Source: Hydrolagus colliei (Eukaryota). Taken from it: a stretch of 64,000 bases of DNA. The translations under genes and the position numbers were made by a program. The stretch lies in assembly GCA_035084275.1 (NCBI GenBank), contig CM068756.1:14942001-15006000 (forward strand). Reading direction: 5' to 3'. The notes below the pieces were generated by a model. That model was not told the origin of the DNA. It worked only from the letters and a program-made list of their open reading frames with translations, and searched no databases. The first letter of the stretch is position 1, and each line of letters opens with the position of its first letter. Positions 1 to 33,949 of this stretch are shown in pieces.

Positions 1-86
1 AGATTACAGTGGATTTTTTGTTAACTGTGCTTCAATTTCAACATAAAGACTTAAATAATTAATTTCCAATTCCCTGGCTTTTATAG

Positions 87-965: not shown

Positions 966-981
966 TGTTATTGTTTTACAG

Positions 982-2093: not shown

Positions 2094-2169
2094 AATCTAT
2101 CACAACTGAACACACAATGTTATGATAATAGATGCAGATGCTCATTAGAGTGCAGTAAACCCATAATAA

Positions 2170-2486: not shown

Positions 2487-3989
2487 AATCTATCTCTCTT
2501 TCTCTCCGTCACTCTCTCTATCTGTCTCTTGATTTCTCTCAGTCTTTCTCTCTTTCTCCCTCAGATTCTCCCTCAGTCTCTCACTCCCTCTTCTGTGAAG
2601 CGCTTTGAGACATCTAGAAAACATGAAAAAGACTATATCAAATGCAAGGATTATTAGCAGTACAAGTAGTAGTAGAACAATGTTAATCATTCCATTCAAT
2701 GTGGAGTAATGCCCAAGTTGTAAATTGACTCCATATGTTAAACCCACTATAGTTATTTGTGATCTTTAAATATTTTATGTGGTTCCTTTGAGAAAAGTTG
2801 TCCGGGTTACATTTATTTCCAGTTTAAAGTGCTGATCAGTGATAACTTATATTTATCTGATAATATCTTTGGACCCAACTCATGAATTCTTTAATAAAGA
2901 AATAATTATGTATACCACAAGCCTCACAAACATAAACTGTGTCAATTTAAATGGTTTTGGCGTCATACCGTATTGTGTATAATCAGCTTTTTCAAAGTCA
3001 TACCATATCATGTTTTAAGAAATTTTCCAATAAAGATCAATTCTGAAGCATAACTTGTGTGTTGTCTCATTTCATCACGTTGTTTGTTTTCAATATTCAC
3101 CAAATGTGATATGGTTTCTCTTGAAATCTGCTTAATAAAATATTTAATTAGTTAAAAACAGCTCAATTCATACTCCAGTGGTGAAAAGGTTGAGGTGTCG
3201 GTGTTCTTCTCGTGAATTATCTGCGAAAATTGCCTAACAGGAAGTAATTGGGTTTTCTTACCAGTTGTTTTTTGTGGTTGATGATACTGACACTAAATGA
3301 TTCCTGTTTAAGTCTCACACTCACTCTCTGCTGAATACAGAGCGTGGTTTTATGAACTTTTATCCACCATAGGCAGTTTTGCAATATACTGTAGGAGCTA
3401 GGCATCTGTAACTAACAGTTCTGAATTCTACCCATTGGCAGTCTTTAAAACCTAGCTTTTTTTACAATGTAAGATTACTATCAATTAAAATGTGTAGACA
3501 TTAAAATATGTAGACACAACCAGTTTTAATTTTACAGGTGTTACTGGAAACTGGCTTGCAAGACTGTGTTGAAGAATAATGAATGCTAAAACCAATCTAA
3601 CTCGAATTTCAAGCCTGACATTTCCGAATCAATGCAATAAGAGATGGGGACTGACAGTTGAAGAATGAACTAATCGTGCACATCTTCTTGTTCTCTTTTG
3701 TTTGCTGTGTGTGCACTCTACTCAACTCTACATTAGATTGATTTTGAACTAAATTCATTTCTGTTAAGTTCTCTAACACCATTCTTTAACATATAGATTC
3801 TGCAGGACAAGTTTTCTATCACAGTAACTGTGGCATGCAAGATACAAATATTCCTTCTTGTAATACTTCCTGCGTTAGGGACACATTTAGGACACCATGT
3901 TCCTGGCTGACATTCTGGTATGTTGCTGTACTTTCAAAGGTATCGTCATTTGCATGAGAATCTAGGAAGTCTCCCTAAACATCTCCCTA

Positions 3990-4625
3990 AACTTCTCACT
4001 CCTCACAGCTGTACCCCCATCCCCACCCACTGCCCCCCACCCATCTCTGCCCCCTTAGCTCCAGCTTCCTTGTTCCCCCAAGTCCTCCACTGAGTCTGAC
4101 CTCCTCCATGTCCCCGAATCCTCTGCTCCACACTGGCGGCCATGCCTTCAGCCACTATTGCCCCGAGGCTCTGGAATTCCCTTCCTCACTACCTTCGCCT
4201 CGTACCCTTTTCTCAGCTTCAGGTCCCAGCTGAAGACTTTTCTCTTTGACCGCGCCTTTGGTCACCCCTTTGGTCACCTTCCTACCCCTGCATCTGGCTC
4301 GGTCCCGGGATCCGCTATTGTGAAGCGCTCTGAGACACCGGCCGGCGTGGAGGGCACTATATAAATTAAAGTTGTTGTTGTTATTGTTGTTGACCTCCGC
4401 TCCACCATCAGCGGCCATGCTTTCAGGCACTACACCCTGAAAATCTAGAACTCCCACCCTCAACCCCTTTGTCTCAACTCCTCCTTTCCCATCTTCAGGT
4501 TGTACCTGAAAACCATTCTCTTTGACCGTGCTAATGTTCCCCTTCTCTTCTCCCTCACACAGCTTCAGGCTCCGCCACTTCTAAGAGCTCTGAGAAGCCG
4601 CCCTGTTTCATAAATGCAAGTTGCG
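3990..4625 (+). mobile_element. Cluster of old L2 3' fragments, missing from the second duplicate copy
   Basis: LKTFLFDRAF remnant and (GTT)n tails; the paralogous site near 22530 lacks this block. Confidence 0.65.
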
Positions 4626-5888
4626 GTTTTTGTTGACGTGTTCTAACCCAAAGATCCTAATTGGACTGGGAAAAAAAATAGCAAAGGAATGGTGTGTGAC
4701 TCTAACACACACCAGGAACAGAAAAGGGTAAGGTAACACAAGGGAGGATGTTGAAAGTTGAAGGATATTGGTGTGGTTTGAAGTTGTTAAAGTAGATATA
4801 ATTTTGTGCTAAAAATTGAAGGACCAACATTAAAAAAGTGATTACTTCTAGGCAGAGGTATATGCTACGTGTGCAAATGTACATCCGCCCCTGTGTGATA
4901 TTGCATCTTAAATAATCTGTTGTGGGTGCTGCACAGCTTCTAACCAGATATTCAGCATTCAGGGTTTCTTCTAAACATACAAAACCACTTGATCAATCTT
5001 ACTTTTTCACATCTCATACCCTTCTGCTCACACAGCTTTCATTGAACACAATGAACCAATCATATAACACGCTACTTTTACAGACCATGTAAGGAACTTT
5101 TGAAGATTTATTGACATGCCCTGACACAGAGAGAGCAAGTTTGTAAGATAGATGAAAAGCTAAACAGAAACAGAATTATTCCAAGCATCAAGAGGCAGCA
5201 GAATTAGCATAACAGATAGAAACGCTTTTCTGCACACAAAAGTCAAACTGAAATAATCATATGATAGTAACGTGTACCAAATAAATATTCTGAAACATTT
5301 TCTTGCAATATCCTTCATTTCATCACCTATTTATTCACACACTATATTGAACACACTACCCTGTGTTGGTTCACAGCTCTTTAGGGTCAATTGCCCATAC
5401 GTTTCATGGGTTAGCCCAACAATAACAACAACAACAACATTACATTTATAGAGCACCTTTCACAGGCTAAAAATATGCTATTTTCCACAGATCAAACCAT
5501 TTAATTATTATCGGCTAAGTGTTCATCAGGAAATCTTCCGCACACGGATTGGCACAGAACCCAATTCTTTCTCTTGCAAACATCATCACACAAACATTTT
5601 CCATCATTAACTATGGGTTGGGTCACTGCCAAGAAAACCCTTGGGTCCTGATGTCAAATGCAGCGCCCCCCAGTGTCACCTCAACTAGTACCAGGCAGAT
5701 GAGCACAAGCGTTGGCTGGTATTGAGGATGGAAACTTCTCCTGTGTTATATATTTCCGACTGTAAATTCACCACCTGAGGAGACATTGCAATATGTTTTT
5801 CATTTTTTAAAAAGGTTTTACAATGAATATTGTTTTATAGAAGCCTTTACTTGAGGAGTGATTCTATAAGTAAAACATATTACTGGCT

Positions 5889-6477
5889 ATAATAACAACT
5901 TTTCATGTCTTCTAAACGTCTCAAAGCACTTCACAGAATATACTGTGAAGTGAATAGACTGTATACACATGGGCAATATACGGTAGTCAATTGTGCAGTG
6001 TCCCACAAATAGTTGTGGAATTAAATGACCAATTTCTTCTTTTTGAGGGATTATTCTTCGGAATGGGTTTTTAATGAAACTTGTCCAAGGTTTCGCCCTG
6101 CTTGGAATTGAACCCAGGTCTCTCACTTGTAAGGCGAGTGCTGTAACCACTGAGCTACAGGACACTACAATTTTGAAGAGTCCTGTGCCTCAGTGGTTAG
6201 AGAACTCATCCTACAAGCAAGCGACCTGGATTTGTTCCAGGCAGGGTGAATCCTTGAGCTAGTCTCCTTTTTGCACAGGCCTGATAATAATCCCTCGAGA
6301 AAAAACAATAATAATTTGGTCATTTCAATCGACTGTTTGTGGGACACTACTGTGTGCAACAATCGCGGTTCACACATGTATACACAGTCAATTCACTTTA
6401 CAGTACATTCTGTGTAGCACTTTAAGACGTCTAGAATATGTGAAAATTGTTATATCAAATGCAAGGATTATTATTAG
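5889..6477. mobile_element. Head-to-head pair of SINEs (minus 5889-6165, plus 6177-6477); paralog about 23741-24329
   Basis: Two near full-length copies in divergent orientation about 12 bp apart. Confidence 0.85.
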
Positions 6478-7859
6478 ATGCAGCACTGTCAATTTATTTT
6501 AATGTTGACAAATGCAGTCATACTTAATTCTCAACCAAATGATAAAGCTCTTAGACATACAGCAGGAACTTAAAACTGAACCATAATGCCTAACACTTAT
6601 CTTACAACCACATAAACTATTCTCATCATTGGCTTAAAGTTTAGTTCACGGAAACTCATTTTCTCTCAAGCACAGTACATTTGTGATCACTTCAAGTCTT
6701 TTATCTCATATGTTGTGTTCACATTGTCTACGAGGTTGGCTGAAATACGTGTTTGGAAACCACAATATGTTGCAGCAGAGACAAGTGTGCTGCTAACTGA
6801 GCTGAGTTTCCACTAAAGCCACAATGTAATTATTCATTTATCACAATGTGATCACAATGATCTCCCCCTCTATTTATTTCCACCCTGCCCTGAACTCTTC
6901 ACCAAACAGTGGTCACAGTAGTCTCAGCGTTTTGGGACATTCTCCCAACTTGAAAGGCTCTCTATCAATGTAATTTTTTTGTTGTTGTTATTGTCACAAT
7001 ATCTTACGTGCCCACCATCACAGATTTATTGATTATGATTATTCTGTGTGTGCTTCTCTCATCAAAACAATTTTGACCTCACATCTAGGTATTTCTATGA
7101 GTGAACCACATGGATTTTTGTTTATTTCACTTCATTAAAGGAACTACAGAGGATGGCAATAATATACATGATAAAAAATAAATGATCGTATTTATCTGGG
7201 AATGTTTAGCCTTTATTTTCTCCAGCAGCAACGTAAGATACTTAACGCTCAGCTGGACAGGCAACAGAACATTGGGTACAACTTTCACTAGAAGGATAGC
7301 ACTCCCATTACAGGATGTTCTAAAATAAAATTGGTCAATTCAATCCAAGACAGTTTGTGAGATACTGCGGTGTGCAATTGGCTGCCATTTCACCCACAAA
7401 TATACAGTCAATTCACTTTACAGTTTATTCTGTGAAGTGATTTGAGACATCTAGAAGACATGAACAGTGCTACTTCAAATGCTAGGACTATTATGATTAT
7501 TATTATTAAAAGTGGCCATGTTAAGATTGAATCCCCAATGTTCTGTGCTCATAGCGTTATGGAATTAAACAACAATAATTGCTAAAGCTTGACATCTGTA
7601 TCGGTCTTGAATGGTAATTATATGTTCTACACTATCCTATGTTGCTGTGATTCACTCCATGGAAGCAGACTGGCATAACTCCTGATCATGATCCCAAGAG
7701 ACAAGAGTTTAATTGCTGAGGGTATCAAGATAATGGAGAGGAATTTTTGTACTAAATACGATGGAAGTAGAAACGGGAGAACCAGAAGGAAGCAGCTAGG
7801 GTTTGAATGTTTAACATTGATTATTGAGTCACCAAAGATGGAGTGTTCATAACCAAAAG

Positions 7860-8400
7860 AGAGCAAGAAACTTCCCTGTATCCAAGCCATGATCCTCTCT
7901 ACCATCCCTCACCTCCGCAACATTGCCGGACTCTGCCACTAACTCACCTCTCAGTTCGCTGAAACTCTGATTCATCCCTTCATCACATCCAGGCTTGACT
8001 ATGCCAATGCTCTCCTCGTCGACCTTTCCAACTCCACCCTCTGTAGATTCCAGGTCATCCAGAACTCTGCGGACCATGTCCTTTACCACTCCAAATTCCA
8101 TGATGCCATCTTTCCCATCCTCACCCAACTCTATTGTTTCCCTATCACCCAGAGGATTCAAATCAAGATCCTGGTCCTCATTTTCAAAGCCCTCCATGGC
8201 CTAGCACTGCCCTAACTCTGGGACACCCAACCCACTACCAACCTGACTACTCCCTCTGCTTAGGAGTGCCAGCCTGCTCTATGTCCACCGACCCACCTGC
8301 CCCACCATCAGTGAGTGAGCCTTTTACATCTGGAATTCCATCCCGCAGTCCCGTTGGAGTCCATTCTCCCGAGGTGAAAGACACAATATAAATATAATCT
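7860..8400 (+). mobile_element. Old L2 RT C-terminal fragment
   Basis: [10 protein letters not shown]-like and IKILVLIFKALHGL remnants. Confidence 0.7.
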
Positions 8401-8424
8401 TGTTATTGTTGATTTTATAAATTT

Positions 8425-8615
8425 CAGGCAGCATCTATGGAGAAAGCAAGTGAGACAATGATTTAGGTTCACGACCATTCGTCAGATGGACGAAGGGTCA
8501 TTCACCCAAAGCGTTGCCTCACTATCCTTACTCCAGAGATGCTACCTGACCTGCTGAGGGCTCCCAGCGATTTCTGTTTTTGATTCAGATTTCCAGCATC
8601 TGTAGTATTTTGCAT
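8425..8615. mobile_element. Penelope-like inverted terminal repeat remnant (paralog 27362-27550; single arm 50410-50540)
   Basis: Palindrome CAGGCAGCATCTATGGAG...GACC(A/C)TTCGTC / GACGAAGGGTC...CTCCAGAGATGCT(A/G)CCTG. The family assignment is from recalled chondrichthyan repeats. Confidence 0.55.
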
Positions 8616-8619
8616 TTTT

Positions 8620-9375
8620 GATCTAGTTTTCATGTTCGGTTCTGAAGCCAAGGAGGGCACGGGGGATGGGGCAGTGGATTGTCTCCTTAATGGATTTCCA
8701 AACAGGTGGAACGATTGGCTGAAAGCTCTATCAGCTCCCGGGATGGGGCAGATCGATTATTGGGACATGGGATACTTGTATAGTTGTAGAGTGGATGGAG
8801 TAGAAGGACAGTGAGGCCATTTGATCGTGAGGTTAAACATCTCCAGTTGGATTTGCTGGTCCAGGAGAAGGGCTGCACAGAACAGTGGGGTCTCCAGCTT
8901 GTGTATGGAGACGCTGGGAGTCCCCATGAGTTGGGAAGTTGATCGATCAAACCTATATGGAATGACCCCATCAGGGTCCTCGCAGCCCTAGTGAGCTGTA
9001 GGTATTGATTGAGGTGATGTTGGGAAGGTGCCGGAAAGCTAAGGGATTGACAGCCAAGAAGGACATTTGATTTTTGGGTGCCAGTCGTTGTCTGACATAT
9101 GCAGGAACCGATCTCCATGCTCAAACCTATCACACCCGTCCTCACTCGAATTCGTTGGCTTCCCATCACAGAGAGGAACCTGGTTCTCACCTTCCACTTC
9201 AAATGTAATGATTATTTTATTTCATGCTGGACTACAATGCTGGGGTAGTCCAGGAGTTTAATTGAAGTGGGAGCGATGTAAACCGCAATCTTTGCTTCAG
9301 AGATCAGTGTGATATCAAGCCAGCTGAACTTACATTGAAACCACAAAGCCTGTGTATATTTATTACACTATTATT
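8620..9375 (-). mobile_element. Degenerate LINE (L2/CR1) RT fragment; copies near 27570-28320 and 37480-38290
   Basis: ALLLD(LS)-type RT motif remnant; three colinear copies. Confidence 0.55.
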
Positions 9376-11111
9376 ACAAGGCTCTCCCTCTCCCCATCTA
9401 TTTGCTAATGTTCTGTTTTGCTCTGACCATTCCACCTTGCAGTGGGCACTTTGTCTGAGGTGTGGAGCATCACAGAATTATTCATTATAATTATTCTATG
9501 TGGGTTCCTCTCATCGAAAGTGTATGGACGTCACATTGAGATATTGTGTGAGTGAACCACGTGGAGATACCTTTCTTTCACTTCAATAATGAAACTGCAG
9601 AGGGAGGCAACACTACAGAATAGTTTCAGCTGCAAATACATTTCAGTGCGGCATTCATTCTTTCTCTCATCAGTAGGTCAATAGCGATAACAATAATAAT
9701 ACTTCTCGGAGTTGATCACTGGTTTACCAATCTTTGAAACCTGGTGAAAGCGTTTGTCGGGGTTTTATGTACTGTCACTTTACAGTTGGCGAAAACAGAA
9801 GCCAATTTAACGCAGCAATGTACCCACAAACAGACACCAAATACATCACCATTTCTACCAAGAGACTTTCGGCCAAGACACCGGGAGAAAATCACTTCTA
9901 TTTTCCAGCAGCGACGGAGGATATTTTATACCCAGCTGAACTGGCAAACGGGAACCCGGGTAAACATTTCACTCGAAGCAATGCTCCCCCATTAGAGAAT
10001 ATTCCTAAAGTTCTCTTGTCAACGTTTAGCACATAACACTCTGACTGAGCGTCCAGAGGCTGATACAAGCTGCAGGTTAATGCCCATCCTCGCACTTGAC
10101 CTGGTGCCTACAGGAAATGGAAATGTGTTCAAGCGCATTGCTGTTTAGTTAATGACTGTGTCTGTAACAGAGATCAGCAGAGAGAATACACAGTCGATTG
10201 AATAATATCATTCAAAATAATATCTATTACACGGACGTTTAGAATAATTGGCATTGCTCCAAAATCCATAGATTAAAAGTGACGGTTTGTTCTGGCATCA
10301 GCTGAATATAGTGGACTCCGGCACATGTTACATTACAGCTCCTTCAGTCCAGGGCACAGGAGCTGGGATCTCTAACAACAAATTGACACTATGACAATGT
10401 CAGCATCACTTTCTTTACAAATATTTAACGGCGTCACTTCTGGCGGAAATGTGATTGATATTTATCTGTCTGAGAGTCGCACTTTACAATTCATTAGTAT
10501 AATAAAATGAATACAATGCTCATACGGTTAAGCAATGAAATAATATTAATGTGCCTTTAGACAGCGTCCCTCACACGGAGTAGAGGAAATCTCTGCCGCC
10601 CATTTTGGAAAGGAGGGGACGAGAAACAAGCAGGAGGCCAGAGTCAGGCGAGCGGTGGCTGTGGGTGGGGCAGCAGGTCTGGGAGGTGGGGAGGGACGGT
10701 CAGGTCATGCGGGGCTTGTAAACCAGCTTGAGGATCTTGAACACGATCAGTTCTGTGACATGGAGCCAGTGGAGCCTGGCGAGGATTGGTGGGATGGCAA
10801 TACAGAGTTTAAACCTCTCCATTAAACATTGGTTTCAATGATACTATTGAGTTATCCGAACCTGATAAGTCACTGGGTACAGTGTTGGTCACCGCTACAT
10901 GGAGGTTGCTCTAGAGTCAGTCCTGGAGAGAAAAGCAAGGAGAATTATCCAGAGAAGTGTTTGAAGAACAAGCAATCAACAAGGAATTGGTCATCTGGGC
11001 TCCATAGTCTTGAAAATACGACTCATTCGTGTCTCCTAGTGTCTCACTAATATAATAACTTGAATGTACGCCGAAAGTCTGGAAACATGTTATCAAATCA
11101 GAGGGGGAGCC

Positions 11112-11137
11112 CAGCTGCGCCCACAGGGTCAGGAAGT
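11112..11137 (+). promoter_or_regulatory. Candidate leukocyte-type proximal promoter of I1 (E-box CAGCTG, ETS CAGGAAGT); also present upstream of A2
   Basis: Motifs about 90-120 nt upstream of the leader ATG. They are short, so support is weak. Confidence 0.3.
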
Positions 11138-11229
11138 CAAACATCACCCTCACATCTCATCTCAATCAACTCCAACCCCTGGTCACAGACCAGCCACAGC
11201 TTTAGGGTTAGTCTCAGTCACAGATCAGG

Positions 11230-14200
11230 ATGTTGGCGAGTGTTGTGTTTCAGTGTCTGTCTCTCACAGTGTGGATCATTTCTAAAGGTTTGTGACTATT
11301 CATTAGCCCAGTGATCTCAAACACAAAGTGTGTGTCTCTGTCACAGTATTTTGTTTCAAAACAATGTTTGAATTTATTTCTGACAGTTGCTGACGGTACA
11401 TTGATCACAGTAACACAACAACCCGAACAGATCACTGTCAACAGAGGTGAAAATGTGATATTCTACTGCACCATCTCTAGCACAGCGAACGTGAAACTAT
11501 ACTGGTGGAAACAGGGAGAGAGTGAATACATGGTATTGGATCACAAGAAAACATTTGAAGACGACCTTTCTGGAAGGGCCTTCTTCAGTCTCCAGGATGC
11601 AGGTCCTCAGGACTCTGGGATCTATTACTGTTCAGTGGTATTGAAGGGAAATAAAACAATAAATGGAACCGGATCACATTTAACTGTATGTGGTAAGTGA
11701 CATGATAAGGAAGAGATAGTAACTATTAAAGTTACTCAAACTATAACTTACTACCCATATAAGGCCTCTCACTGTTGATAGAGAATCTTCAAGGGCTTTA
11801 TAAAGCCTGAGGATTAGCCAGAGTTCAGACCCAGCTGGGAGGAGAGAGTGGCCGAAAGGAAGGTTAAAGAGACATGTCATCAGGCGGGGTTCGATAGGAG
11901 AGAAGGAAGATAAGAACGATGAATCCTTGTCCTCACCTTTAAAGTCCTCCATGCCCCATCTCTGCGACCTCCTGACCCCCTTCCAACCCACCCACTCCCT
12001 CTGCTCAGTGGACACTGGCCTGCTCCTTTTGTGCCGACCCACCCCACTATTGGTGGGCAAACCTCCAGCCACTCTGCCCCCAACCTCTAGAATTGCATTC
12101 TGGAATGGCCAAATGTGTCCGCAGTTTTCCAGGACATTGCTGATAATAAGAATAATAAGAATGATCCTTAAATTTGATGTAGAGGGTTTCACGTTTTTAT
12201 TTAGAGGTCTCAAGATGCTTCTCAGAATCTACTATCTTGGGCAAGTTTCCTTGCTCCACACACCTGATAATAATCCCTCCAAAAAAAACCACAATAATAA
12301 AATTGGTCATTTTAATCCACGACTGTGTGTGGGACACTGCTGTGTGCAATTGGCTGCCGCGATTCGCCAACAAATATATACAGTCAATTCACTTTGCAGT
12401 GTATTCTGTGAAGCGCTTTGGGACGTTGATAAGATGTGGAAAACGCTGCATCAAATGCAAGGATTATTATTATTATTATTACTATAAAGTGAATTGACTG
12501 CATATACTCAATGTGGACAAAAATAGCAATATGCAATTGTACAAAGCAGTGTCGCACAATCAGTCAAGAATTGAATTGGCTTTTATTACTGTCTGACAGG
12601 AGATTATTATTTTCTTTTGAGGGATTATTATTAGGTGTGTGGAGTAAGGAAACTTGCCCAAAATTTCCCTGCCTGGAATTGAACCCAGGTCTCTCGCTTC
12701 TAAGGTGAGTGATCCAGTCACTGAGCTACAGGATTCCTGATGACAACACAGTCAGCCTGGTTCAGCGGCAGGACCTGGAAAAGTCGAATAGTGACTGGGG
12801 CGGGGATTCATCCCACTGTTAATCCCACATTTCCAAGCTGTAACGTAGCAGGACAAGCAATGGGAAACTTTGCCAGACAGCAATATCAATGGGAAACTAT
12901 GCGGCTTTAGCTGGTTAGACTCCAGGCCTGTTTGTGATCTCCTTCCAATACTTAAATACAAGTTCTTCATTGTTAAAGTTCATTTTTTGTGTCTTCTGTA
13001 AAATGGAAATTGTGTCGTTTACACCAGAACCCAGTTTATATATAAACCTTTATACGTTAGTGGGAACTGACATGAACAATCACCCTGGTGAGATTTGTTA
13101 TTCACTTGATAGTTATAGAGATATATTTCTGTGCACAAATTGCCTGCCCTTCCTTTACAAATACAGCCAATACTCTTCATAGTATGTCCTGCAAAGCGAT
13201 TTGTGATGTGTTTTTATTTTAGCAAATCTTTTTATTCCAGTGCCACCAATTCCACTGAATATTGCAGCCAAATCTCCTCCAAGAGATTCATCTGTGTTTC
13301 TGACGCTCGTTTGTGAAACGGCCGCGTTTTACCCGGAGAATCTCACCTTCATATGGTCTAAAAACGGCACCGAAATTACAACCGGGATAATCAGCACTGA
13401 ATGGCAGAACCCGGAGGGATTGTATGAAGCTTCCAGCTCAGTGGAGGAGACACAGCCTGTCCGGAATGGGACAGTTTATACCTGTCAGGTGTCTCACCTC
13501 AGCCTCCAGACTCCAGCAATTGGCAACTACACGGTTCAGCTTCCACATCAAGGAAGGAATTTTAGTTTCAGTGGTAATTATCATTAACTGTCTTTCACCC
13601 GAATATTTCCTTCTTTTAATTCACATAAAGAATGATAGCTTTATTTCTCAAACGAATTTGCTTCATGTGAAATATAAATCAATTTTACTTTTTTAATGGA
13701 GAATATTTGAATTATTCTGACTGCAAGATAATATCACTTTCCCTTGAACATATTAACAATTCGGATTTCAAACGTGTAATTTCGTATACCAGTATATTGA
13801 AAGCCAACAACAATACAAACAAAATTACATGTATTGAGCACCTTTCACGTCGGGAAGACGTCCCATGGCGCTGAACAGTCAGGTCGGGACCCGAACAAGT
13901 GAGAGGGGCAGGGTAGGGAAGAGGGTCAGGAAACAATGAGGATGGGAGGGAGAGAGTTGGGAAGGCAGCAGAAGGCACGGGCGAAGAGGAGGTCTTTCGA
14001 CCGGCTTTGAAGGAGGTGAGGGAGGGAGAGAGGCGATGGGACTGTGGGATGGAGTTCCAGAGTGTGGGGGCAGAGAGGCTGATAGTCTATCCACCAATGG
14101 TCTGGTGGGTCAGTCGGAGTATATGGAGCAGACTGGAGAACGCTAAATGGAATGGGTGTGGAAGTACATAGCACGATTACTGGTAGGAGAAGACGGGGGT

Positions 14201-17200
14201 ACCATGCCATGAATGACCTTGAAAGTGAGGATGAGGATGTTGAATTCGATCCTCTGGTGGACAGGAGCTAATGCACCAAGGCGAGGGTGGGAGTGATGTG
14301 TTCATAGAGCTTGGTGCGGGTGAGGACATGAACTGCAAAGTTCTGGATGATCTGCAGCTTGTGAAGGGAAGAACCAGGAAGGCCAATGAGGAGGGAGTTT
14401 CCATATCAAGCCTTGATGTATGGCACGTGAATTTATATTGTATTAGTAAATTGTGACTTCTTAGAATCATAGAATATTACAACACAAAAGGAGGCCATTT
14501 GCCCCATTGAGTCTGTGCTGGCTCTTTGAAACGAGCAATTTAATCCTACTCCCCAGCTCTCTCCCCATAACCGTGCAAACCCATCGTCCCCAAATAAATG
14601 TCCACCTCTCTTTTAAAAGTTGTTATCGAATCGGCTTCCACCACTTTTTCAGGCAATGCATTCCAGATTCAAGCAACTCGCTGAGTGAAAACATTTCTCC
14701 TCACCTCCCCTCTGCTTCTTTTTGAAACTATTTTAAATCTGTGACCACAAGTCACTGATACATCCAACAGTAGAAACCGTTTTTCCCTGTTTACTCTGTC
14801 GAATTCCCTCAAGATCTTAAAAACCTCTATTAGGTCTTCTTGTAACCTTCTCTGCTCCAATGAGAATAAACCTAGCCTCTCTAGCCTTTCCTCATAACTG
14901 AAGTCCCTTCATTACTGGTACCATCCTCGTAAATCTCCTCTGCACCATTTCCAATGCCTTAACATCCTTCCTAAAGTGTGTGACCAGAATTGAACTCAGT
15001 GCTCTAGCTGAGGCCTAACCAAAGTTTTATAGAGTTTAGTCAGAACTTCCTGACTTTTGTATTCTATGCCCCAATTTGTAAAACCTAGTATCCCGTATGC
15101 TTGTTTTTTAACAGTTGCTACATGTCACCACTATTTCATCTCACGATCCGTCTTCAATAGCTTTATGTTAACAAAAATTATAAATTTCAGGAATTGTCAA
15201 TTATTCATTTGTTTGAAGTTCATTGGTTCCCCTGGAGCTGCAGATGAGTCTGGATGATAACGCTGCCCATTCCACAGGGCATTGGAGCACTTTGACCTGT
15301 GCCTGGACTGACAATCTTTTAGTAGATGTCTCTAACTACAGCGATCTCCCGAAAAAATAACTAAGATACCTACCACCGATTCCTCTAACCGATAATAAAT
15401 ATAGGTGTATTCACATAAAATATGAAATTAAAAACAATTTGTAATAGTTTCCTACGAAGCACTTTGAGACATCTGCTTGCTGTAATAAGGTGCTAAACCA
15501 AACACAATAATTATTATTTATTATTATTGCCAAGAGGTTTCATTATCTACAGTTGTCTCTCTACAAAATAATTAATTTACTCTTGCATCTCCTTACTGTT
15601 TAGTAAAAGTAATAGAATACCTTTTAAATGGTCAAACATCACCCAATGGCAAAACAGGAAACAAGTCACATGAACATCATGGTTTCCAACTTTTATGCAT
15701 TGTTCTTAACTGGAAAAATATGATATCCTAACTTTTTCTGACAAATTGTTCAATTATTTAAATTGTAAATCATTAGATCACAATGCGCAGATTTCTCTCT
15801 GCTGGTGTCCAGGCCAACAATGCTCGAAATCAAATTGTTGGCTCACTCTATCATTGAGGAGAAATTGGCTGCCGTTTTCACCCACAAATGCACAATCACA
15901 ACATTTTACAGTACGTCATATGAAGTATTTTGAGACGCTTTGACGACGTGATAAGATTTTACATCAATTATGTCATATAATGGATCATTATATTATAATT
16001 ATGATCTTATCTATAATAGGAAATCAGCTGCTCTATTCATTGCTGATCACTGTATCTGCAGTGGGACTGGCTTTTTTGGTTCTTTTGATGTACATTGGAA
16101 AGCGATCAATGTCAAAGAAAATGAAAGGTAAGAGTCAAATGATTTAGTTCTGGTTGGTGCTTGATTTTAGTACAGTGTAAGTGTGAAAGTACTGTAGCCC
16201 TCCAGACAGAGTTTTTCTGTTCGAAAAGGCTGACCCTTAATTTTAAAACTGTGACCCCTGGTTATAGATTCTCCTACCGGGGAAACAGTCCCTCAGTGCC
16301 TACTTTATCTAGCCCTTTAAGAATCTTATGTGTTTCAATAAGATCGCTCCTAATTCTTCTGTACTGTAGAGAATACAGCCCTACATTCAGTTTTTTTCAA
16401 CACTGAAGATTCAATACAAATTTCAGTTATTATATTTCATTCCTTTTAGGGGTACAGAGGAATCAGAATGATTTGAGCCAGCATAGCCAGCAGGTAATAT
16501 GCACACCTATATGTTATTTATAATGATATGAGGATGTTTTCAACATATTTCTTACATGATTGTCCATTTCACTTTGTCATTCAAATTGTGTTCACACCAA
16601 TATGAGGCACCAAAGCAATGCAAGCAACATAAAATACAAGTGAAAAGTTAAGTGTTGCAGTTTGTGATAATAATAATAATAATCTTTGCATTTGATATAG
16701 CGCTTTGCACATCTAATCGACATCTCAAAGCACTTCACAGAATATATGGTAACGTGAATTCATTGTATATTTGTGAGCAAAATGTGGCAGCCAATTTGCA
16801 CAACAGTGTCCCACAAACAGTCGTGGATAGAAATGAACCATTTGTATTATTGTATGTGTTTTGGGACAGATTATTAATAGGTGTAAGAAAATATAGGCAA
16901 TGCAAGCAGGAGATGATGAAATGGTGACTTATATCTCATTGAATTTGAAAACTTCCAATAAACTTTCAACACCTAAATATTAGATACAATAGTTTACACA
17001 TGAAAAACACAACATAATAGTGCATCTGAATAACTTAAAATTGATACATACAATAATATGATTCTGACTGTAATAAATAGAGTGATGCTCATGTGTTCTG
17101 TTGAGAGAACATCACTTCAGGGAGGATGTTGAAAACTTCAATGAAGATTTCCAAGAATAATTTGAGCAGACAGGACAAGTCTGTTTACATTGGAGCAAAG

Positions 17201-20140: not shown

Positions 20141-21058
20141 AATCTATCACAACTGAACAGGATACACACAATGTTACAATAATAGGTGAGGATGCTCATT
20201 AGAGTGCAGTAAACCCATAATAATAAGACTAATCATGATTACCTATAAATTTGATATAGCGCTGTACATGTCTTCTAGACATCTCAAAGTGCTTCACATA
20301 AAATAATGTAAAGTAAATTGACTTTCTATTTGTTGGCAAAACACAGCACCCAATTGCACACAGTAGTGCCACAAACAGTCGTGGATTAAAGTGACCACAT
20401 TATTATTGAATTTGTTTTGCGTGGCATTATTATTAGATGTGCGGATAAAGGAAATTTACGCAAGGTTTCACCCTGCCTGAAATCGAACTGAGGTCTCTCA
20501 CTTGTAAGTCGAGCGCTCCAACCACCCTAGACAAGACTCTAATCTCTCTCTCGTTCTCTCTGTCACTCTCTCTATCTGTCTCTTGATTTCTCTCAGTCTT
20601 TCTCTCTTTCTCCCTCAGACTCTCTCTCAGTCTCTCGCTCCCTCTTGTGTGAAGCTATTTGAGACATCTAGAAGACATGAAAAGGACTATATCAAATGCA
20701 AATTAGTAGTAAAAACAATGTTAATCATTCCATGCAATGTGGAGTAATGCCCAAGTTGTAAATTGATTCCATATGTTAAACACAACTATAGTTATTTGTG
20801 ATCTTTAAATATTTTATGTGGTTCCTTTGAGAAAAGTTGCCTGGTTACATTTATTTCCAGTTTTACGTGCTGATCAGTGATGACTTATATTTATCTGATA
20901 ATATCTTTGGACCCAACTCGTGAATTCTTTAATTAAGAAATAATTATGTATACCACAAGCCTCACAAACATAAACTGTATTCAATTTAAACGGTTTACTG
21001 TATTGTGTATAATCAGCTTTTTCAAAGTCATACCATATCATGTTTTAAGAAATTTTCC

Positions 21059-21064
21059 AATAAA
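21059..21064 (+). terminator. Candidate poly(A) signal of I1
   Basis: AATAAA about 920 nt after the stop; the same site exists in the I0 copy near 3029. Confidence 0.3.
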
Positions 21065-21530
21065 GATCAATTCTGAAGCATAACTTGTGTGTTGTCTCAT
21101 TTCATCACGTTGTTTTTTTTCAATATTCACCAAATGTGATATGATTTCTCTTGAAATCTGCTTAATAAAATATTGAATTAGTTAAAAACAGCTCAATTCA
21201 TACTCCAGTGGTGAAAAGGTTGAAGTGTCGGTGTTCTTCTTGTGAATTATCTGCTAAAATGTGCCTAACAGGAAGTAATTGGGTTTTCTTACCAGTTGTT
21301 TCTTGTGGTTGATGATACTGACACTAAATGTTTCCTGTTTAAATCTCACACTCACTCTCTGCTGAATACAGAGCGTGGTTTTATGTACTTTTATCCACCA
21401 TAGGCAGTTTTGCAATATTCTGTAGGAGCAAGGCGGCTGTAACTAACAGTTCTGAATTCTACCCATTGGCAGTCTTTAAACCTAGCTATTTTTATAATGT
21501 AAGATTACTGTCAATTAAAATGTGTAGACA

Positions 21531-22180
21531 ACAACAACAACAAATTGCACTTATAAAGCGCCTTTCACGTCGGGAGGACGTCCCAAGGCGCTGCACAGGA
21601 GGCGTGTGACCCGAGCTGGGAGGGGAGTGTACGGGGAGGGGTGAAACACGTAGGGGAGGTCGAAAAAATTCTGGGTGGAACAAAAGGAATGGTCAAAGAG
21701 GAAAGTCTTCAAACCGGCCTTGAAAGAGGAAAGGCAAGAAACAAGGCGGAGGGATTGAGGGATGGCATTCCATAGGGTGGGAGCAGAAAAACTGAAGGTC
21801 CGGCCTCCGATGGTGGGGCGGTTCGGGCGGGGGGCTTGGAGCAGGCCACGTCCTGCTGAACGGAGGTTCCGGGTCGGCTTGTAGGGGGAGAGTAAATTGG
21901 TTATGTAGGGCGAGGCAAGGCCATGTAAGGCCTTGAAGGTGAGGACGAGGATCTTGAATTCGATCCTCTGGAGGATGGGGAGCCAGTGGAGACGGGCGAG
22001 GGTGTGGGTTATGTGGTCACGAAGGTGGGTGCGGGATAATACATGGGCTGCAGAGTTTTGGATGACCTGCAGCCTATGAATGGAGGAGCTGGGGAGGCCG
22101 ACGAGGAGAGAGTTTCCGTAGTCCAGCCTTGAGGTGATGTATGCGTGCACGAGTGTTTCGGCAGCGTGGGGGGTAAGACA
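21531..22180 (-). mobile_element. Young 5'-truncated L2-clade LINE (RT C-terminus plus 3' tail), absent from the first duplicate copy
   Basis: ORF 21551..22150 (SRLDYGNSLL...RLHWLPI...RIEFKIL); (AAC)n tail; flanked by AATTAAAATGTGTAGACA at 21513-21530 and 22184-22201. Confidence 0.9.
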
Positions 22181-30172: not shown

Positions 30173-33100
30173 ATGTTGGCGAGTGTTGTGTTTCAGTGTC
30201 TGTCTCTCACAGTGTGGATCATTTCTAAAGGTTTGTGACTATTCACTATCCCAGTGATCTCAAACACAAAGTGTGTGTCTCTATCACAGTATTTTGTTTC
30301 AAAACAATGTTTGACTTTATTTCTGACAGTTGCTGACGGTACATTGATCACAGTAACACAACAACCCGAACAGATCATTGTCAACAGAGGTGAAGATGTG
30401 ACGTTAACCTGCAACATCTCTAGCACAGCGAACATAAAAATACACTGGTGGAAACAGGGAGAGAGTCAATACATTGTATGGGATCACAAGAAAACATTTG
30501 ATGTCGAATTTTCTGGAAGGGCCGTCTTCAAACTCCACGATGCAGGTCTCCAGGACTCTGGGATCTATTACTCTTCAGTGGCATTTAACGGAAATAAAAC
30601 AGTGAATGGAACTGGATCCCGTGTAACTGTATGTGGTAAGTGACATGATAAGGAAGAGATAGTAACTATTATATTTACTCAAACTATAATTTACTACCCA
30701 TATAAGGCCTCTCACTGTTGATAGAGAATCTTCAAGGGCTTTATAAAACCTGAGGATTAGCCAGAGTTCAGACCCAGCTGGGAGGAGAGAGTGGCCGAAA
30801 GGAAGGTTAAAGAGAAATGTCATCAGGCGGGGTTCGATAGGAGAGAAGGAAGATAAGAACGATGAATCCTTGTCCTCACCTTTAATGTCCTCTATGGCCT
30901 TGCCCCCCATATCTGCGACCTCCTGATCCCCTTCCAACCCACCCACTCCCTCTGCTCAGCGGACACTGGCCTGCTCCTTTTGTGCCGACCCACCCCACCA
31001 TCAGTGAGCAAACCTCCAGCCACTCTGCCCCCAACCTCTAGAATTCCATTCTGGAATGGCCAAGTGTGTCCGCAGTTTTCCAGGGCATTGCTGATAATAA
31101 GAATAATAAGAACCATCCTTACTTTGATGTAGAGGGTTTCACTTTTTTATTTAGACGTCTCAAGATGCTTCTCAGAATCTACTATCTTGGGTAAGTTTCC
31201 TTGCTCCATATGCCTGATAATAATCGCTCCAAAAAATAAACACAATAATAAAATTTGTCATTTTAATCCACGACTGTGTGTGGGACACTGCTGTGCGCAA
31301 TTGGCTGCCGCGATTCGCCCACAAATCTATACAGTCAATTCACTTTGCAGTGTATTCTGTGAAGCGCTTTGGGACGTTGATAAAATGTGGAAAACGCTGC
31401 ATCAAATGCAAGGATGATTATTATTATTATTATTACTATAAAGTGAATTGACTGCATATACTCAATGTGGACAAAAATAGCAATATGCAATTGTACAAAA
31501 TAGTGTCGCACAATTCAGAATTGAATTGGCTTTTATTACTGTTTGACAGGAGATTATTATTTTCTTTTCAGGGATTATTATTAGGTGTGTGGTAGTGGAG
31601 TAAGGAAACTTGCCCAAAACTTCGCCCTGCCTGGAATTGAACTCAGGTCTCTCGCTTCTAAGGCGAGTGATCCAGTCACTGAGCTACAGGATTCCTGATG
31701 ACAACACAGTCAGCCTGACTCAGCGGCAGGACCTGGAAAAGTGGACTAGTGACTGGGGGCGGGGATTCATCCCACTTTTAATCCCATATTTCAAAGCTGT
31801 AACCCTGTGGGAAACGCAATGGGAAACTTTGCCAGACAGCAATATCAATGGGAAACTATGCGGCTTTAACTGGTTAGACTCCAGGCCTATTTACAATCTC
31901 CTTGCAATACTTAAATACGAGTTCTTCATTGTTAGTTACAGTCCATTTTTTGTGTTTTCTGTAAAATGGAAATTGTGCCGTTTACACCAGAACCCAGTTT
32001 ATATATAAACGTTTATACGTTAGTGGGAACTGACGTGAACAATCACCCTGGTGAGATTTGTTATTCTCTTGATGGTTGTAGAGAGATATTTCTGTGCACA
32101 AATTGCCTGCCCTTCCTTTACAAATACAGCTAATACTCTTCATAGTATGTCCTGCGAAGAAATTTGAGATGTGTTTTTATTTTATCAAATATTTTTATTC
32201 CAGTGCCACCAATTCCTCTGAATATTTCAGCCAAATCTCCTCCAAGAGATTCATCTGTGTTTCTGACCCTCGTTTGTGAAACGGCCGCGTTTTACCCAGA
32301 GAATCTTACTTTCACATGGTCTAAAAACGGCACCGAAATTACAACCGGGATAATCAGCACTGAATGGCAGAATCCGGAGGGACTGTATGAAGCTTCCAGC
32401 TCAGTGGAGGAGACACAGCCTGTCCAGAATGGGACAGTTTATACCTGTCAGGTGTCTCACCTCAGCCTCCAGACTCCAGGAATTCACATCTACACATATT
32501 GGCAACGTCCACAAGGTAGGAATTTCAGTCTCAGTGGTAATTATCATCAACTGTCTTCGACCTGAATATTTCCTTCTTTTAATTCACATAAAATCCACAC
32601 ATTCTCTTTCAAGGCCAGTTTGAAGACTTTCCTCTTCGACCGTGCCTTTTGTTCCACCCCGCATTTTTCTACCTCCATTTCGTGTCTCACCCCTTCCCAA
32701 ACACTCCCCTCTCAGCTCGGGTCAGACGCCTCCTGTGCAGCGCCTTGGGACGTCCTCCCGACGTGAAAGGCGCTCTATAAGTGCAATTTGTTGTTGTTGT
32801 TTGGTGTAAAGAATGATAGCTTTATTTCACAAATGAATTTGCTTCATGTGAAATATAAATCTTTCACTTTTTTACTGGAGAATATTTGAATTATTTTGAC
32901 TGCAAGATAATATCACTTTCCCTTGAACATATTAACAATTTGGATTTCAAACGTGCATTTCGAATATATTCAATGCCAACAACAACAACAAAAACAAAAT
33001 TACATTTATAGAGCACCTTTCACGTCGGGAAGACGTCCCAAGGCGCTGAACAGTCAGGTCGGGATCCGAGCAAGTGAGAGGAGCAGGGTGGGGGAGAGGG

Positions 33101-33933
33101 TCAGGAGACAATGAGGAGGGGAGGGAGAGAGTTGGGAAGGCAGCAGAAGGCACGACCGAAGAGGAGGTCTTTAGACAGGCTTTGAAGGAGGCGAGGGAGG
33201 GAGCGAGGTGAAGGGAATGTGAGATGGAGTTCCAGAGTGTGGGGCAGAGAGGATGATAGTCCATCCACCAATGGTCGTGCGCGTCGGCGGAGAAGGGCCG
33301 GGGGGGGGGAGGTGACATGGAGCAGACTGGAGCCCACTGAACAGAAGGGGTGGGGAAGTTCATAACAAGATAACAGGTAGGAGATGTAGTGGGGGCAATG
33401 CCGTGAATGGCTTTGAAAGTGAGGAAGAGGATCATGAATTCGATCCTCCGGGGAATGGGAGCCAGTGGAGCTGGGTGAGGGTGGGAGTGATGTGATCGCA
33501 GAGCTTGGTGTGGGTGAGGACATGAGCTGCAGAGTTCTGGATGATCTGCAGCTTGGTGAAGGGAAGAATCAGGAAGGCCGACGAGAAGGGAGTTTTAATT
33601 GTAAAATGATCAGCTCTCAGGATTTATACAATTATTAGTTGAATTAGAATTAGGTAAGTTTTGACATCAATTACGGAGAGTTGATGGTACTGAAAACTCC
33701 ATCAACCAAGCGCAAACGCTGAATCACAACTTGTCCCGCTCCCCAGATTAGTTGATTTAATAAAAACATTTCAGTTAAAAGCAAGTGGCGCAAAGCTCTC
33801 ATGATTCTCTCTTTACTCGGCAGTGTTTAATGTACACGGTTATCTTGGAATATTTCGGTTTGCATTCAGCGCGTTGGTAATATTACTGATGGCCGCCATC
33901 CTTGTGGACTATTTCAAAATGAATCCTGTTTAA
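30173..33933 (+). CDS. Gene A2: activating-type VJ-C1-TM receptor with transmembrane Arg and a very short tail, about 261 aa
   Basis: join(30173..30230,30330..30635,32204..32515,33824..33933) = 786 nt, open, all introns phase 1 GT-AG. TM exon (V)FNVHGYLGIFRFAFSALVILLMAAILVDYFKMNPV*. The F-strand Cys of the V domain is Ser. Confidence 0.8.
32605..32802 (+). mobile_element. Short 3' fragment of the same young L2 family in the A2 C1-TM intron
   Basis: Near-identical to the tails of the two insertions above; (GTT)n end; absent near 13625. Confidence 0.8.
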
Positions 33934-33935: not shown

Positions 33936-33949
33936 GTAAGGCTTATAGA

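What the first reader, a model, noticed from the sequence alone, without database searches (positions are those of the whole stretch)
11387..11692. Strong signature of diversifying selection confined to the V exon (I1 versus A2)
Seen, manual codon comparison with 30330-30635: 35 of 306 nt differ, affecting 29 codons, of which 27 change the amino acid and 2 are purely synonymous. In contrast the leader exon is identical, the leader-V intron differs at 4 of 99 nt, and the first 92 C1 codons have 3 nonsynonymous and 7 synonymous differences. The V exon is therefore more diverged than adjacent intron. Inference: ligand-driven (host-pathogen) selection on the binding domain.
Basis: partly seen in the sequence, partly recalled or inferred. 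Interest (0 to 1): 0.8.

Follow-up and report, generated by a model that had tools for sequence, protein, structure and literature searches.

The report
Fast-evolving V domain in paired receptors
Two neighbouring immune-receptor genes of a chimaera-like fish, one inhibitory and one activating, are near-identical copies except for the exon encoding their outer binding domain, which has piled up protein-changing differences; this is a familiar pattern in host-pathogen arms races, seen here in a little-studied gene family.

Summary
The leader is identical, the intron differs at 4/99, and the first 92 C1 codons have 3 nonsynonymous and 7 synonymous differences.

The two genes are tandem copies of a V-C1 immunoglobulin-superfamily receptor. 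The closest solved relative is SIRPalpha, and the closest proteins are an uncharacterised Callorhinchus milii multigene family. I1 has an uncharged transmembrane segment and an ITIM. A2 has an Arg-bearing transmembrane segment and an 8-residue tail. This is a classical inhibitory/activating pair.

The V exon is a sharp divergence peak (11.4%) inside an ~11-kb block that is only ~4% diverged. 'Strong signature' overstates the case:
- Codon-model omega for V is about 2-2.7. From synonymous sites alone it is not significantly above 1 (p 0.07-0.15).
- It is significant only when introns serve as the neutral yardstick (p <= 5e-6), or when V is contrasted with C1 (omega 0.18; p ~ 2-4e-6).

Replacements occurred in both copies, are interleaved along the exon, and sit mainly on beta-strands rather than the tip loops. 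A2 has also lost the canonical Cys that all 57 aligned relatives keep.

Diversifying selection is the best explanation. An unconverted old island, or conversion from an unsampled paralog, cannot be excluded. The result is a new example of a known phenomenon.

The parts
11230..11287 (+). I1 leader (signal peptide) coding exon, ATG at 11230
   Evidence: Identical to 30173-30230. Matches the leader of C. milii P0003. GT donor.
11288..11386 (+). I1 leader-V intron (99 nt)
   Evidence: 4/99 differences from 30231-30329. GT..AG.
11387..11692 (+). I1 V exon (V-set domain with a J-like NGTGSHLTV motif), phase 1 at both ends
   Evidence: Pfam V-set/Ig hits. 35/306 nt and 27/102 aa differ from A2. AG/GT splice sites.
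11435..11680 (+). Diverged core of the V exon; all 35 differences lie here (14% divergence)
   Evidence: First and last differing positions. The unchanged first 48 nt are unlikely by chance (p = 0.002).
13241..13573 (+). I1 C1-set exon plus stalk
   Evidence: Pfam C1-set E = 9e-13. omega = 0.18 against A2. AG/GT sites, in-frame conceptual splice.
16020..16127 (+). I1 transmembrane exon, uncharged (LLYSLLITVSAVGLAFLVLLMYIG)
   Evidence: tblastn with P0001. Splice sites and frame.
16450..16493 (+). I1 small cytoplasmic exon (VQRNQNDLSQHSQQ)
   Evidence: Alignment with the third unit and with P0001. AG/GT sites.
16897..16983 (+). I1 cytoplasmic exon with ITIM VTYISL, ending in an in-frame TAG
   Evidence: tblastn with P0001. 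Translation.
30173..30230 (+). A2 leader coding exon
   Evidence: Identical to the I1 leader.
30330..30635 (+). A2 V exon. It carries C82S (loss of the canonical Cys) and a new N-I-S sequon at residue 29.
32204..32515 (+). A2 C1-set exon. The proximal GT donor is at 32516; an alternative in-phase donor follows 32536.
   Evidence: Pfam C1-set E = 1e-14. Both splice options keep the frame.
33824..33933 (+). A2 terminal exon: transmembrane segment with Arg (YLGIFRFAFSALVILLMAAILV), 8-residue tail, stop codon
   Evidence: tblastn with P0004. Acceptor, frame and stop. This segment has no counterpart in the I1 unit.
2500..13600 (.). Low-divergence (~2-7%) block of the tandem duplicate, paired with ~20590-32590. 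Outside it, divergence rises to 9-25%.
   Evidence: Self-BLAST and sliding-window divergence.

Best explanation
I1 and A2 are adjacent members of a tandem array of V-C1 immunoglobulin-superfamily receptor genes and form an inhibitory/activating pair.

How it most likely arose:
- An ~11-kb stretch covering promoter, leader, V exon, intron and C1 exon was copied or homogenised between the two units. This happened recently enough that non-coding DNA differs by only ~4-5%.
- Since then the C1 domain has stayed under purifying selection.
- The V domain has accumulated about 30 replacement changes against about 4-5 silent ones, in both copies.
- The most likely cause is selection for the two V-domain surfaces to differ, as the counterbalance model of paired receptors proposes. 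In that model the inhibitory receptor changes to escape a pathogen or ligand that exploits it, while the activating copy tracks or diverges.
- The activating copy changed somewhat more and also lost the canonical V-domain disulfide. This suggests constraint on it has recently weakened, as is common for short-lived activating paralogs.

Shown here: gene structures, divergence profile, codon counts, omega estimates, polarisation of changes.
Inferred: that selection rather than an older origin of the V core produced the excess, and that pathogens are the agent.
For: - Gene pair: intact GT-AG conceptual splices give I1 (311 aa, uncharged TM, ITIM VTYISL) and A2 (261 aa, Arg in TM, 8-residue tail).
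- Family: both forms recur in C. milii and other representatives. P0001, P0016 and P0017 carry ITIM tails; P0004, P0028, P0040 and P0051 carry the R...VDHF-type TM.
- The V exon is a sharp peak: 11.4% against 3.7-5.2% for non-coding DNA (p = 2.5e-8 and 9e-6).
- ML dS of the V exon is 0.055-0.068, matching intron divergence (0.054). dS >= 0.20, the level seen between this pair and the third unit, is rejected (p = 0.004-0.014; third-unit divergence).
- With dS fixed at the intron value, omega = 2.7-3.9 and omega = 1 is rejected (p <= 5e-6).
- omega(V) differs from omega(C1) = 0.18 at p = 2-4e-6.
- Even if both copies were wholly unconstrained, only about 12 replacement differences would be expected, against about 30 observed (Poisson p = 1.3e-5).
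- Replacements are split between lineages (13 A2-derived, 7 I1-derived, 7 ambiguous) and interleaved (13 runs against 10.1 expected), not in one tract.
- I1 and A2 are each other's nearest V (73.5% aa) and equidistant from P0003 (57.8% each).
- No mutational signature explains the excess: no AID-hotspot enrichment, and the ts:tv ratio is like that of the flanks.
Against: - Using synonymous sites only, omega > 1 is not significant (p = 0.07-0.15).
- C1 dS is 0.09, and with a neutral level of 0.10-0.12 omega(V) falls to 1.2-1.4 (p = 0.06-0.37).
- The duplicate shows 9-25% divergence outside the central block, so the block may be a later homogenisation that skipped the V core. dS = 0.13 is not rejected (p = 0.07-0.16).
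- Only two DNA sequences are available, so no site or branch models could be run.
- A2's C82S at a position invariant in 57 relatives points to relaxed constraint for part of the signal.
- Replacements are not concentrated in the tip loops, so no binding-site logic supports the claim.
Confidence: 0.55

Rival explanations
1. Unconverted island. I1 and A2 are old paralogs (neutral divergence about 10-15%) whose flanks were later homogenised by gene conversion or unequal crossing-over. The V core kept its older divergence, either by chance or because converted haplotypes were selected against. The introns are then too young to serve as a neutral yardstick, and omega for V is about 1-1.4.
For: - Divergence along the duplicate is 9-22% at 1-1500, 2-7% at 2500-13600, and 8-25% beyond 13600.
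- The V core at 14% resembles the outer level.
- dS fixed at 0.10-0.133 is not rejected (p = 0.07-0.44).
- Both lineages carry derived states, and these are interleaved.
- Exon-limited conversion is documented in paired receptors (PMC5112662).
Against: - The best-fit dS (0.055-0.068) equals the intron value, not the outer value, and dS >= 0.20 is rejected.
- Both edges of the island lie inside a 306-nt exon within an 11-kb block, and no adjacent intron base shares the excess. That is improbable without selection on the coding sequence.
- So even this rival implies selection to keep the two V domains different.
Confidence: 0.2
2. Patchwork gene conversion. One or both V cores received short tracts from other V exons of the array that lie outside the window, importing ready-made replacement differences.
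For: - The locus is a tandem array with at least four units, and the family is large (62 representatives at E < 1e-30).
- A2 shares D23, T25, N29, I38, E60, K68, L74, F86 and V92 with P0003.
- Differences show a weak tendency to cluster (gaps <= 2 nt: 11 against 7.3 expected, p = 0.07).
Against: - Most states shared with P0003 are simply the family consensus.
- About 18 of the 54 I1 and A2 states at the 27 differing positions, spread over 13 of them, are seen in none of the 7 closer relatives.
- A2 is no closer to any known paralog than I1 is (57.8% each to P0003).
- Derived states alternate between the two lineages rather than forming tracts.
- Donors as diverged as the third unit (18-22%) would bring more silent changes than observed (dS >= 0.20 rejected).
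- No third V exon exists in the window.
Confidence: 0.13
3. Relaxed constraint only. The A2 V exon is decaying after losing its structural disulfide, and the excess is neutral drift in a dead domain.
For: - C82S occurs in A2 at a site that is Cys in 57/57 relatives.
- A2 also changed conserved framework residues F26L and L99V, and it carries more derived changes than I1 (13 against 7).
Against: - Neutral drift cannot exceed the neutral rate. About 12 replacement differences are expected even with both copies unconstrained, against about 30 observed (p = 1.3e-5).
- At least 7 changes are on the I1 lineage.
- The A2 reading frame, splice sites and TM exon are intact.
- C1 has omega = 0.18.
- The 13:7 split is not significant (p = 0.26).
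Confidence: 0.07
4. Assembly artefact. A collapsed or chimeric assembly of near-identical array units placed a V exon from another paralog or haplotype into the A2 unit.
For: The locus is a tandem array of ~95% identical units with repeats and a gap at 57596-57727. Such arrays are error-prone to assemble.
Against: - The diverged segment is only 246 nt, with both edges inside an exon and no indels. Mis-joins would not respect exon limits or the reading frame.
- The flanks carry their own scattered unit-specific differences.
Confidence: 0.03

Closest known systems
SIRP family (SIRPalpha / SIRPbeta / SIRPgamma) paired receptors
   Same: - SIRPalpha is the best solved-structure sequence match (2wng, E = 5e-20), followed by SIRPgamma.
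- Both have a germline VJ-type V domain with a G-x-G J-like motif followed by a C1-set domain.
- Both have an inhibitory ITIM form and an activating form with a basic TM residue.
- SIRPalpha's V domain is highly polymorphic at surface residues away from the CD47 site. This is attributed to pathogen pressure (PMC3974974), and it resembles the strand-biased replacements seen here.
   Different: - There is only one C1 exon between V and TM (V-C1, not V-C1-C1).
- Sequence identity is low.
- No orthology or synteny has been shown.
- The ligand is unknown.
- Here the contrast is between paralogs, not alleles.
CEACAM paired receptors (mammals, Xenopus)
   Same: Both are tandem IgSF arrays containing ITIM and activating members. 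In both, gene conversion between pair members is followed by rapid accumulation of nonsynonymous changes on the faces of the N-terminal V-like domain, read as pathogen-driven (PMC5112662; PMC2832619).
   Different: - In CEACAM pairs the N exon is the most similar part and the introns are diverged (exon-limited conversion).
- Here the geometry is inverted: an 11-kb block is similar and the V core is the most diverged part.
- The domain architecture differs (V-C1 here, with a C1-set domain).
Callorhinchus milii uncharacterised V-C1 multigene family (XP_007902894 / LOC103185939, LOC103185940, A0A4W3H454 and others)
   Same: - The architecture is the same, the leader is near-identical to that of P0003, and identity over V-C1 is 50-66%.
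- Both ITIM-tailed and Arg-TM forms are present.
   Different: - No member is identical to I1 or A2.
- The database names are automatic and mutually inconsistent ('opioid-binding protein/cell adhesion molecule homolog', 'class II histocompatibility antigen', 'NCR3 ligand 1-like').
- I found no paper describing the family.
Immunoglobulin light chains and UrIg (V-C1 antigen-receptor-like chains)
   Same: The predicted V-C1 fold superposes best on Fab light chains (Foldseek E ~ 5e-15). UrIg2 is the third-best sequence hit in the PDB.
   Different: V and the J-like segment are fused in one germline exon, so no rearrangement is needed. The protein is membrane-anchored with signalling motifs. TM-scores are only ~0.44 because the angle between the two domains differs.

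Membership tests
Paired inhibitory/activating IgSF receptors (functional class) | Adjacent genes with highly similar ectodomains | tested here: met
   The genes are tandem, ~19 kb apart on the same strand. Flanks are ~95% identical at nucleotide level and the V-C1 ectodomain is 84% identical at amino-acid level.
Paired inhibitory/activating IgSF receptors (functional class) | Inhibitory member: uncharged TM and a cytoplasmic ITIM ([ILVS]xYxx[ILV]) | tested here: met
   The I1 conceptual product has TM LLYSLLITVSAVGLAFLVLLMYIG and the motif VTYISL.
Paired inhibitory/activating IgSF receptors (functional class) | Activating member: basic residue in the TM and a short tail without motifs | tested here: met
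   A2 has TM YLGIFRFAFSALVILLMAAILV containing Arg, the tail DYFKMNPV, then a stop codon.
Paired inhibitory/activating IgSF receptors (functional class) | Activating member associates with an ITAM adaptor (DAP12 / FcR-gamma); both members are expressed on leukocytes | not testable with these tools
   No expression or interaction data are available.
SIRP family | N-terminal V-set domain with a J-like G-x-G motif and sequence similarity to SIRP d1-d2 | tested here: met
   The motif NGTGSHLTV is present. The best hit is 2wng SIRPalpha, E = 5e-20, covering query residues 9-193.
SIRP family | Three-domain ectodomain V-C1-C1 | tested here: not met
   Only one C1 exon lies between the V and TM exons in both genes, and the conceptual splices are in frame without a second C1.
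SIRP family | Orthology (synteny, phylogeny) and CD47 binding | not tested
   No flanking SIRP-region markers were identified in the window. Binding is not testable here.
B7H6 / NCR3LG1 (name attached to relative P0007) | B7-type V-C1 ectodomain with best similarity to B7-family structures | tested here: not met
   The architecture is V-C1, but no B7-family chain appears among the 60 best PDB sequence hits. SIRPs, UrIg2 and antibodies lead the list. The name is an automatic annotation.
Genes under positive (diversifying) selection | dN/dS significantly above 1 judged against synonymous sites | tested here: inconclusive
   omega = 2.2-2.7 with LRT p = 0.15-0.07 for V alone. omega = 1.8-1.9 with p = 0.11-0.07 when V and C1 share one dS.
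Genes under positive (diversifying) selection | Replacement divergence above the local neutral (intron) divergence | tested here: met
   dN = 0.146 against intron divergence 0.038-0.054. The LRT gives p = 5e-6 to 1e-9 and Fisher's test p = 6e-5. This holds only if exon and intron share the same age.
Genes under positive (diversifying) selection | Site or branch-site models on a multi-sequence codon alignment | not testable with these tools
   Only two V-exon DNA sequences are available. DNA of the C. milii relatives could not be fetched.

The most novel reading that the evidence does not exclude
The array may be the cartilaginous-fish representative of an ancient germline VJ-C1 paired-receptor lineage, related to SIRPs and to the stock from which antigen-receptor chains arose. 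In this reading, selection diversifies the beta-sheet faces of the V domain rather than its loops. That would imply ligand or pathogen contact, or chain pairing, through a sheet face. The activating copy would have been caught in the act of being discarded, having lost the canonical disulfide.
Probability: 0.12. Interest if true: 0.6.

Novelty: new member of a known kind. Interest (0 to 1): 0.4.

Why it matters
If the selection reading holds, the counterbalance dynamics of paired receptors would be operating in a holocephalan. In that model an inhibitory receptor is exploited by pathogens and an activating twin answers. These dynamics have so far been described mainly in mammals, birds, frogs and teleosts. 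Finding them here would place this mode of innate-receptor evolution near the base of jawed vertebrates, in a SIRP-like V-C1 family that appears unstudied.

Practically, the result flags a gene cluster whose database names are misleading. It also offers a compact test case for separating positive selection from conversion mosaics: two copies that share 11 kb of flanks.

It does not reveal a new kind of mechanism.

Tried and rejected
1. Paralog DNA. Exact-product look-ups for P0001, P0003, P0010 and for my conceptual I1 and A2 proteins found nothing. No third V exon could be aligned at DNA level, so no site models or GENECONV were possible.
2. More paralogs at protein level. Two further word-index searches, restricted to the A2 V region, returned only P0003 and P0010. 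The representative library gave 62 strong relatives, all at 53% identity or less apart from P0001, P0003 and one hit matching only the V region. These served for conservation analysis only.
3. A third V exon in the window: none found (tblastn). The third unit has lost its leader, V exon and half of C1.
4. Mutational explanations. AID-type WRC/GYW hotspots are not enriched (7/35 against 39/306, p = 0.18). Ts:Tv is 16:19 against 103:78 in the flanks (p = 0.27). The number of double-hit codons is about what chance predicts. Rejected as the cause.
5. Clustering of differences as a conversion signature: weak (p = 0.07-0.19).
6. Are changed sites the family's hypervariable sites? Only marginally (mean entropy 2.50 against 2.07, p = 0.06).
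7. Mapping on a structure. Solvent exposure and face assignment are therefore inferred only from the strand alternation pattern.
8. Literature on this family in cartilaginous fish: nothing found. The UrIg paper (PMC12227049) does not discuss it.
Full report
**1. What the sequence shows**

Window 11387-11692 and 30330-30635 are gap-free homologs that differ at 35 of 306 positions. Both are phase-1 exons preceded by an identical 58-nt leader coding segment (ATG at 11230 and 30173) and a 99-nt intron with 4 differences. Read in frame, 29 of 102 codons differ: 27 change the amino acid and 2 are purely silent. The first 92 codons of the next exon carry 3 replacement and 7 silent differences.

A sliding-window comparison of the two duplicated units shows the V exon as a sharp peak. 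It has 21 and 15 differences per 150 nt, against 0-9 upstream of the exon and mostly 3-11 in the intron downstream. That is 11.4% against 3.7% for 4877 pooled non-coding positions (Fisher p = 2.5e-8) and 5.1% for the two introns (binomial p = 9e-6). The first 48 nt of the exon are unchanged (p = 0.002). The diverged core is 11435-11680, with both edges inside the exon.

**2. What the genes are**

Each exon pair encodes a V-set domain followed by a C1-set domain (Pfam).

[quoted passage not shown] The window therefore comes from a holocephalan or a close relative.
- A search of the representative library finds 62 relatives at E < 1e-30.
- The best solved-structure match by sequence is human SIRPalpha (E = 5e-20), then SIRPgamma and UrIg2.
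- An AlphaFold model (pLDDT 78.6) superposes on Fab light chains.
- The V domain ends in a J-like NGTGSHLTV motif, so it is a germline-joined VJ-C1 chain.

tblastn with the family members, followed by inspection of splice sites, gives intact GT-AG gene models.

- I1 consists of leader, V, C1 (13241-13573), an uncharged TM exon (16020-16127), a small exon (16450-16493) and an exon carrying the ITIM VTYISL (16897-16983). The product is 311 aa.
- A2 consists of leader, V, C1 (32204-32515) and a terminal exon (33824-33933). That exon encodes a TM segment with an Arg, an 8-residue tail and a stop codon. The product is 261 aa.
- The same two tail types recur among the relatives.

The array also holds the ITIM tail of an upstream gene (87-2072), a third unit that has lost its leader, V exon and half of C1 (38292-43613), and a fourth, frame-shifted C1 exon (47469-47779).

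**3. How strong is the selection signal**

Six codons carry two differences each, so path-averaged counts are 4.5 silent and 30.5 replacement changes. Nei-Gojobori gives dS = 0.071, dN = 0.139 and a ratio of 1.95. Pairwise Goldman-Yang likelihood gives omega = 2.2 (F3x4) to 2.7 (equal frequencies).

| Test | Result |
|---|---|
| omega = 1, V synonymous sites only | p = 0.15 to 0.07 |
| omega = 1, V and C1 sharing one dS | omega(V) = 1.8-1.9, p = 0.11-0.07 |
| omega(C1) | 0.18, significantly below 1 |
| omega(V) = omega(C1) | rejected, p = 2-4e-6 |
| omega = 1 with dS fixed at intron divergence (0.038-0.054) | omega = 2.7-3.9, rejected at p = 5e-6 to 1e-9 |
| Both copies fully unconstrained | ~12 replacement differences expected, ~30 observed, p = 1.3e-5 |

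So the V domain has clearly left the regime of purifying selection that governs C1. Its replacement rate exceeds the local non-coding rate. The textbook dN/dS > 1 test is only suggestive.

**4. Is the intron a fair yardstick?**

This is the main weakness. The duplicate is not uniformly diverged: 9-22% at 1-1500, 2-7% from about 2500 to 13600, and 8-25% beyond 13600. The third unit is 18-22% from both copies.

The 11-kb central block therefore looks like a later copying or homogenising event inside an older array. The V core (14%) could be a piece that event skipped.

A profile likelihood for the V-exon dS peaks at 0.055-0.068, which is the intron value. It rejects dS >= 0.20 (p = 0.004-0.014) but not 0.10-0.13 (p = 0.07-0.44). 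C1's own dS is 0.09. At a neutral level of 0.10-0.12, omega(V) would be 1.2-1.4 and not significant.

An intermediate-age island cannot be excluded. However, an island only 246 nt long, with both edges inside a 306-nt exon of an 11-kb block, would itself need selection on the coding sequence to explain it.

**5.

No third V exon exists in the window, and DNA of the elephant-shark relatives could not be retrieved. At protein level:

- I1 and A2 are each other's closest V domains (73.5%). They are equidistant from P0003 (57.8% each), and A2 is slightly further than I1 from most of the other relatives.
- Polarising the 27 replacements with seven relatives gives 13 derived in A2, 7 derived in I1 and 7 ambiguous.
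- The derived states alternate along the exon: 13 runs against 10.1 expected. They do not form a tract in one lineage.
- About 18 of the 54 I1 and A2 states at the 27 differing positions, spread over 13 of them, are seen in none of the seven relatives.

This argues against a simple donor. It cannot exclude unsampled paralogs.

**6. Where the changes lie, and the state of A2**

On the predicted fold, 18 of the 27 replacements lie in beta-strands (49 of the 102 residues are strand; p = 0.03). Only 4 lie in the membrane-distal loops, and the CDR1-like BC loop is unchanged. By the alternation of residues along strands, many would face outward on both sheets (B 25/27/29, E 66/68, C 39, F 85, G 98).

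Human SIRPalpha shows the same pattern. Its many V-domain polymorphisms are surface-exposed, lie away from the CD47 site, do not change affinity, and are attributed to pathogen pressure (PMC3974974).

A2 gains an N-glycosylation sequon (T29N gives N-I-S). More strikingly, A2 replaces the second canonical cysteine (C82S), which is invariant in all 57 aligned relatives. It also has conservative changes at the framework positions F26 and L99. A2's reading frame and splice sites are intact, and its C1 has been constrained. The loss is therefore probably recent or tolerated, but it warns that part of A2's excess may be relaxation.

**7. Mutational causes**

AID-type hotspots are not enriched (p = 0.18), the transition:transversion ratio matches the flanks (p = 0.27), and the number of double-hit codons is close to chance expectation.

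**8. Comparison with known systems**

The behaviour matches the counterbalance picture of paired receptors (reviewed in PMC3533184; Barclay and Hatherley 2008, as cited in PMC3974974). It also matches Xenopus CEACAM pairs, where conversion between pair members is followed by rapid nonsynonymous change on V-domain faces (PMC5112662).

The geometry differs from CEACAM. There the N exon is the conserved island. Here it is the diverged island.

The family works like SIRPs but is not a SIRP by architecture, because it has one C1 domain rather than two. The 'NCR3 ligand 1-like' label on a relative has no support from the PDB search. I found no paper describing the family.

**9. Verdict**

The best reading (confidence about 0.55) is divergent or positive selection on the V-domain surface of a recently homogenised inhibitory/activating pair, with some relaxation in the activating copy.

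The main rivals are an older unconverted V core (0.2) and mosaic conversion from unsampled paralogs (0.13). Both still require selection on V-domain sequences somewhere in the family's history.

This is a new example of a well-known evolutionary pattern in an unstudied cartilaginous-fish receptor family, and its interest is moderate.

Noticed in passing
window 16897-16983 and 18063-20119: The first ITIM exon of I1 ends in an in-frame TAG (16981-16983) after ...VTYISLNLKTSNKLSTPKY. The tail is therefore much shorter than in the C. milii relative P0001. Three further ITIM-type exon-like segments follow (18063-18182, 18968-19129, 19949-20119) and appear stranded unless alternative splicing reaches them.
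   Followed up: partly
window 30573-30575 (codon 82 of the A2 V exon): TGT>TCT replaces the second canonical cysteine of the V fold with serine. The position is Cys in all 57 aligned family members, and A2 gains no compensating cysteine.
   Followed up: yes
window 37773-43613: In the third array unit, upstream-type DNA is joined directly to the 3' half of a C1 exon (junction ~38292-38304). The leader, V exon and 5' half of C1 are deleted. An uncharged TM exon (40607-40684) and ITIM exons (40885-43613) remain just downstream of A2. This could be a pseudogene, or a source of alternative 3' exons for A2.
   Followed up: partly
window 47469-47779: A fourth, more divergent C1-set exon whose two halves lie in different reading frames (shift near 47640). 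It is probably a pseudogene fragment.
   Followed up: no
window 13517-13573 vs 32480-32536: The stalk-coding 3' end of the C1 exon is locally out of register between the copies: the motif ATTGGCAAC is shifted and read in another frame. I1 has GA where A2 has a usable GT donor, so the two genes must use different donors.
   Followed up: partly
window 33600-33950: The ~350-bp segment holding the Arg-bearing TM exon is present only in the A2 unit. The aligned position in the I1 unit (~14404-14450) has no counterpart.
   Followed up: partly
window 1-14900 vs 17978-34364: The tandem duplicate has a layered divergence profile: 9-22%, then 2-7% over ~11 kb, then 8-25%. This indicates a younger copying or homogenising event nested in an older array.
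   Followed up: yes
window 21530-22185 and 25836-26929: Two insertions specific to the second unit carry long minus-strand ORFs that are related to each other (90% identity between 21528-22178 and 25836-26486). They look like interspersed-repeat copies and have no Pfam match.
   Followed up: partly
window 63008-63298 (minus strand): An ORF with a glutathione S-transferase N-terminal domain (Pfam GST_N_2, E = 2e-5). It is probably the first coding exon of a GST-like gene flanking the receptor array.
   Followed up: partly
window 45554-46264: A proline-rich low-complexity stretch gives long overlapping ORFs on both strands. It is probably simple-repeat DNA, not a gene.
   Followed up: no
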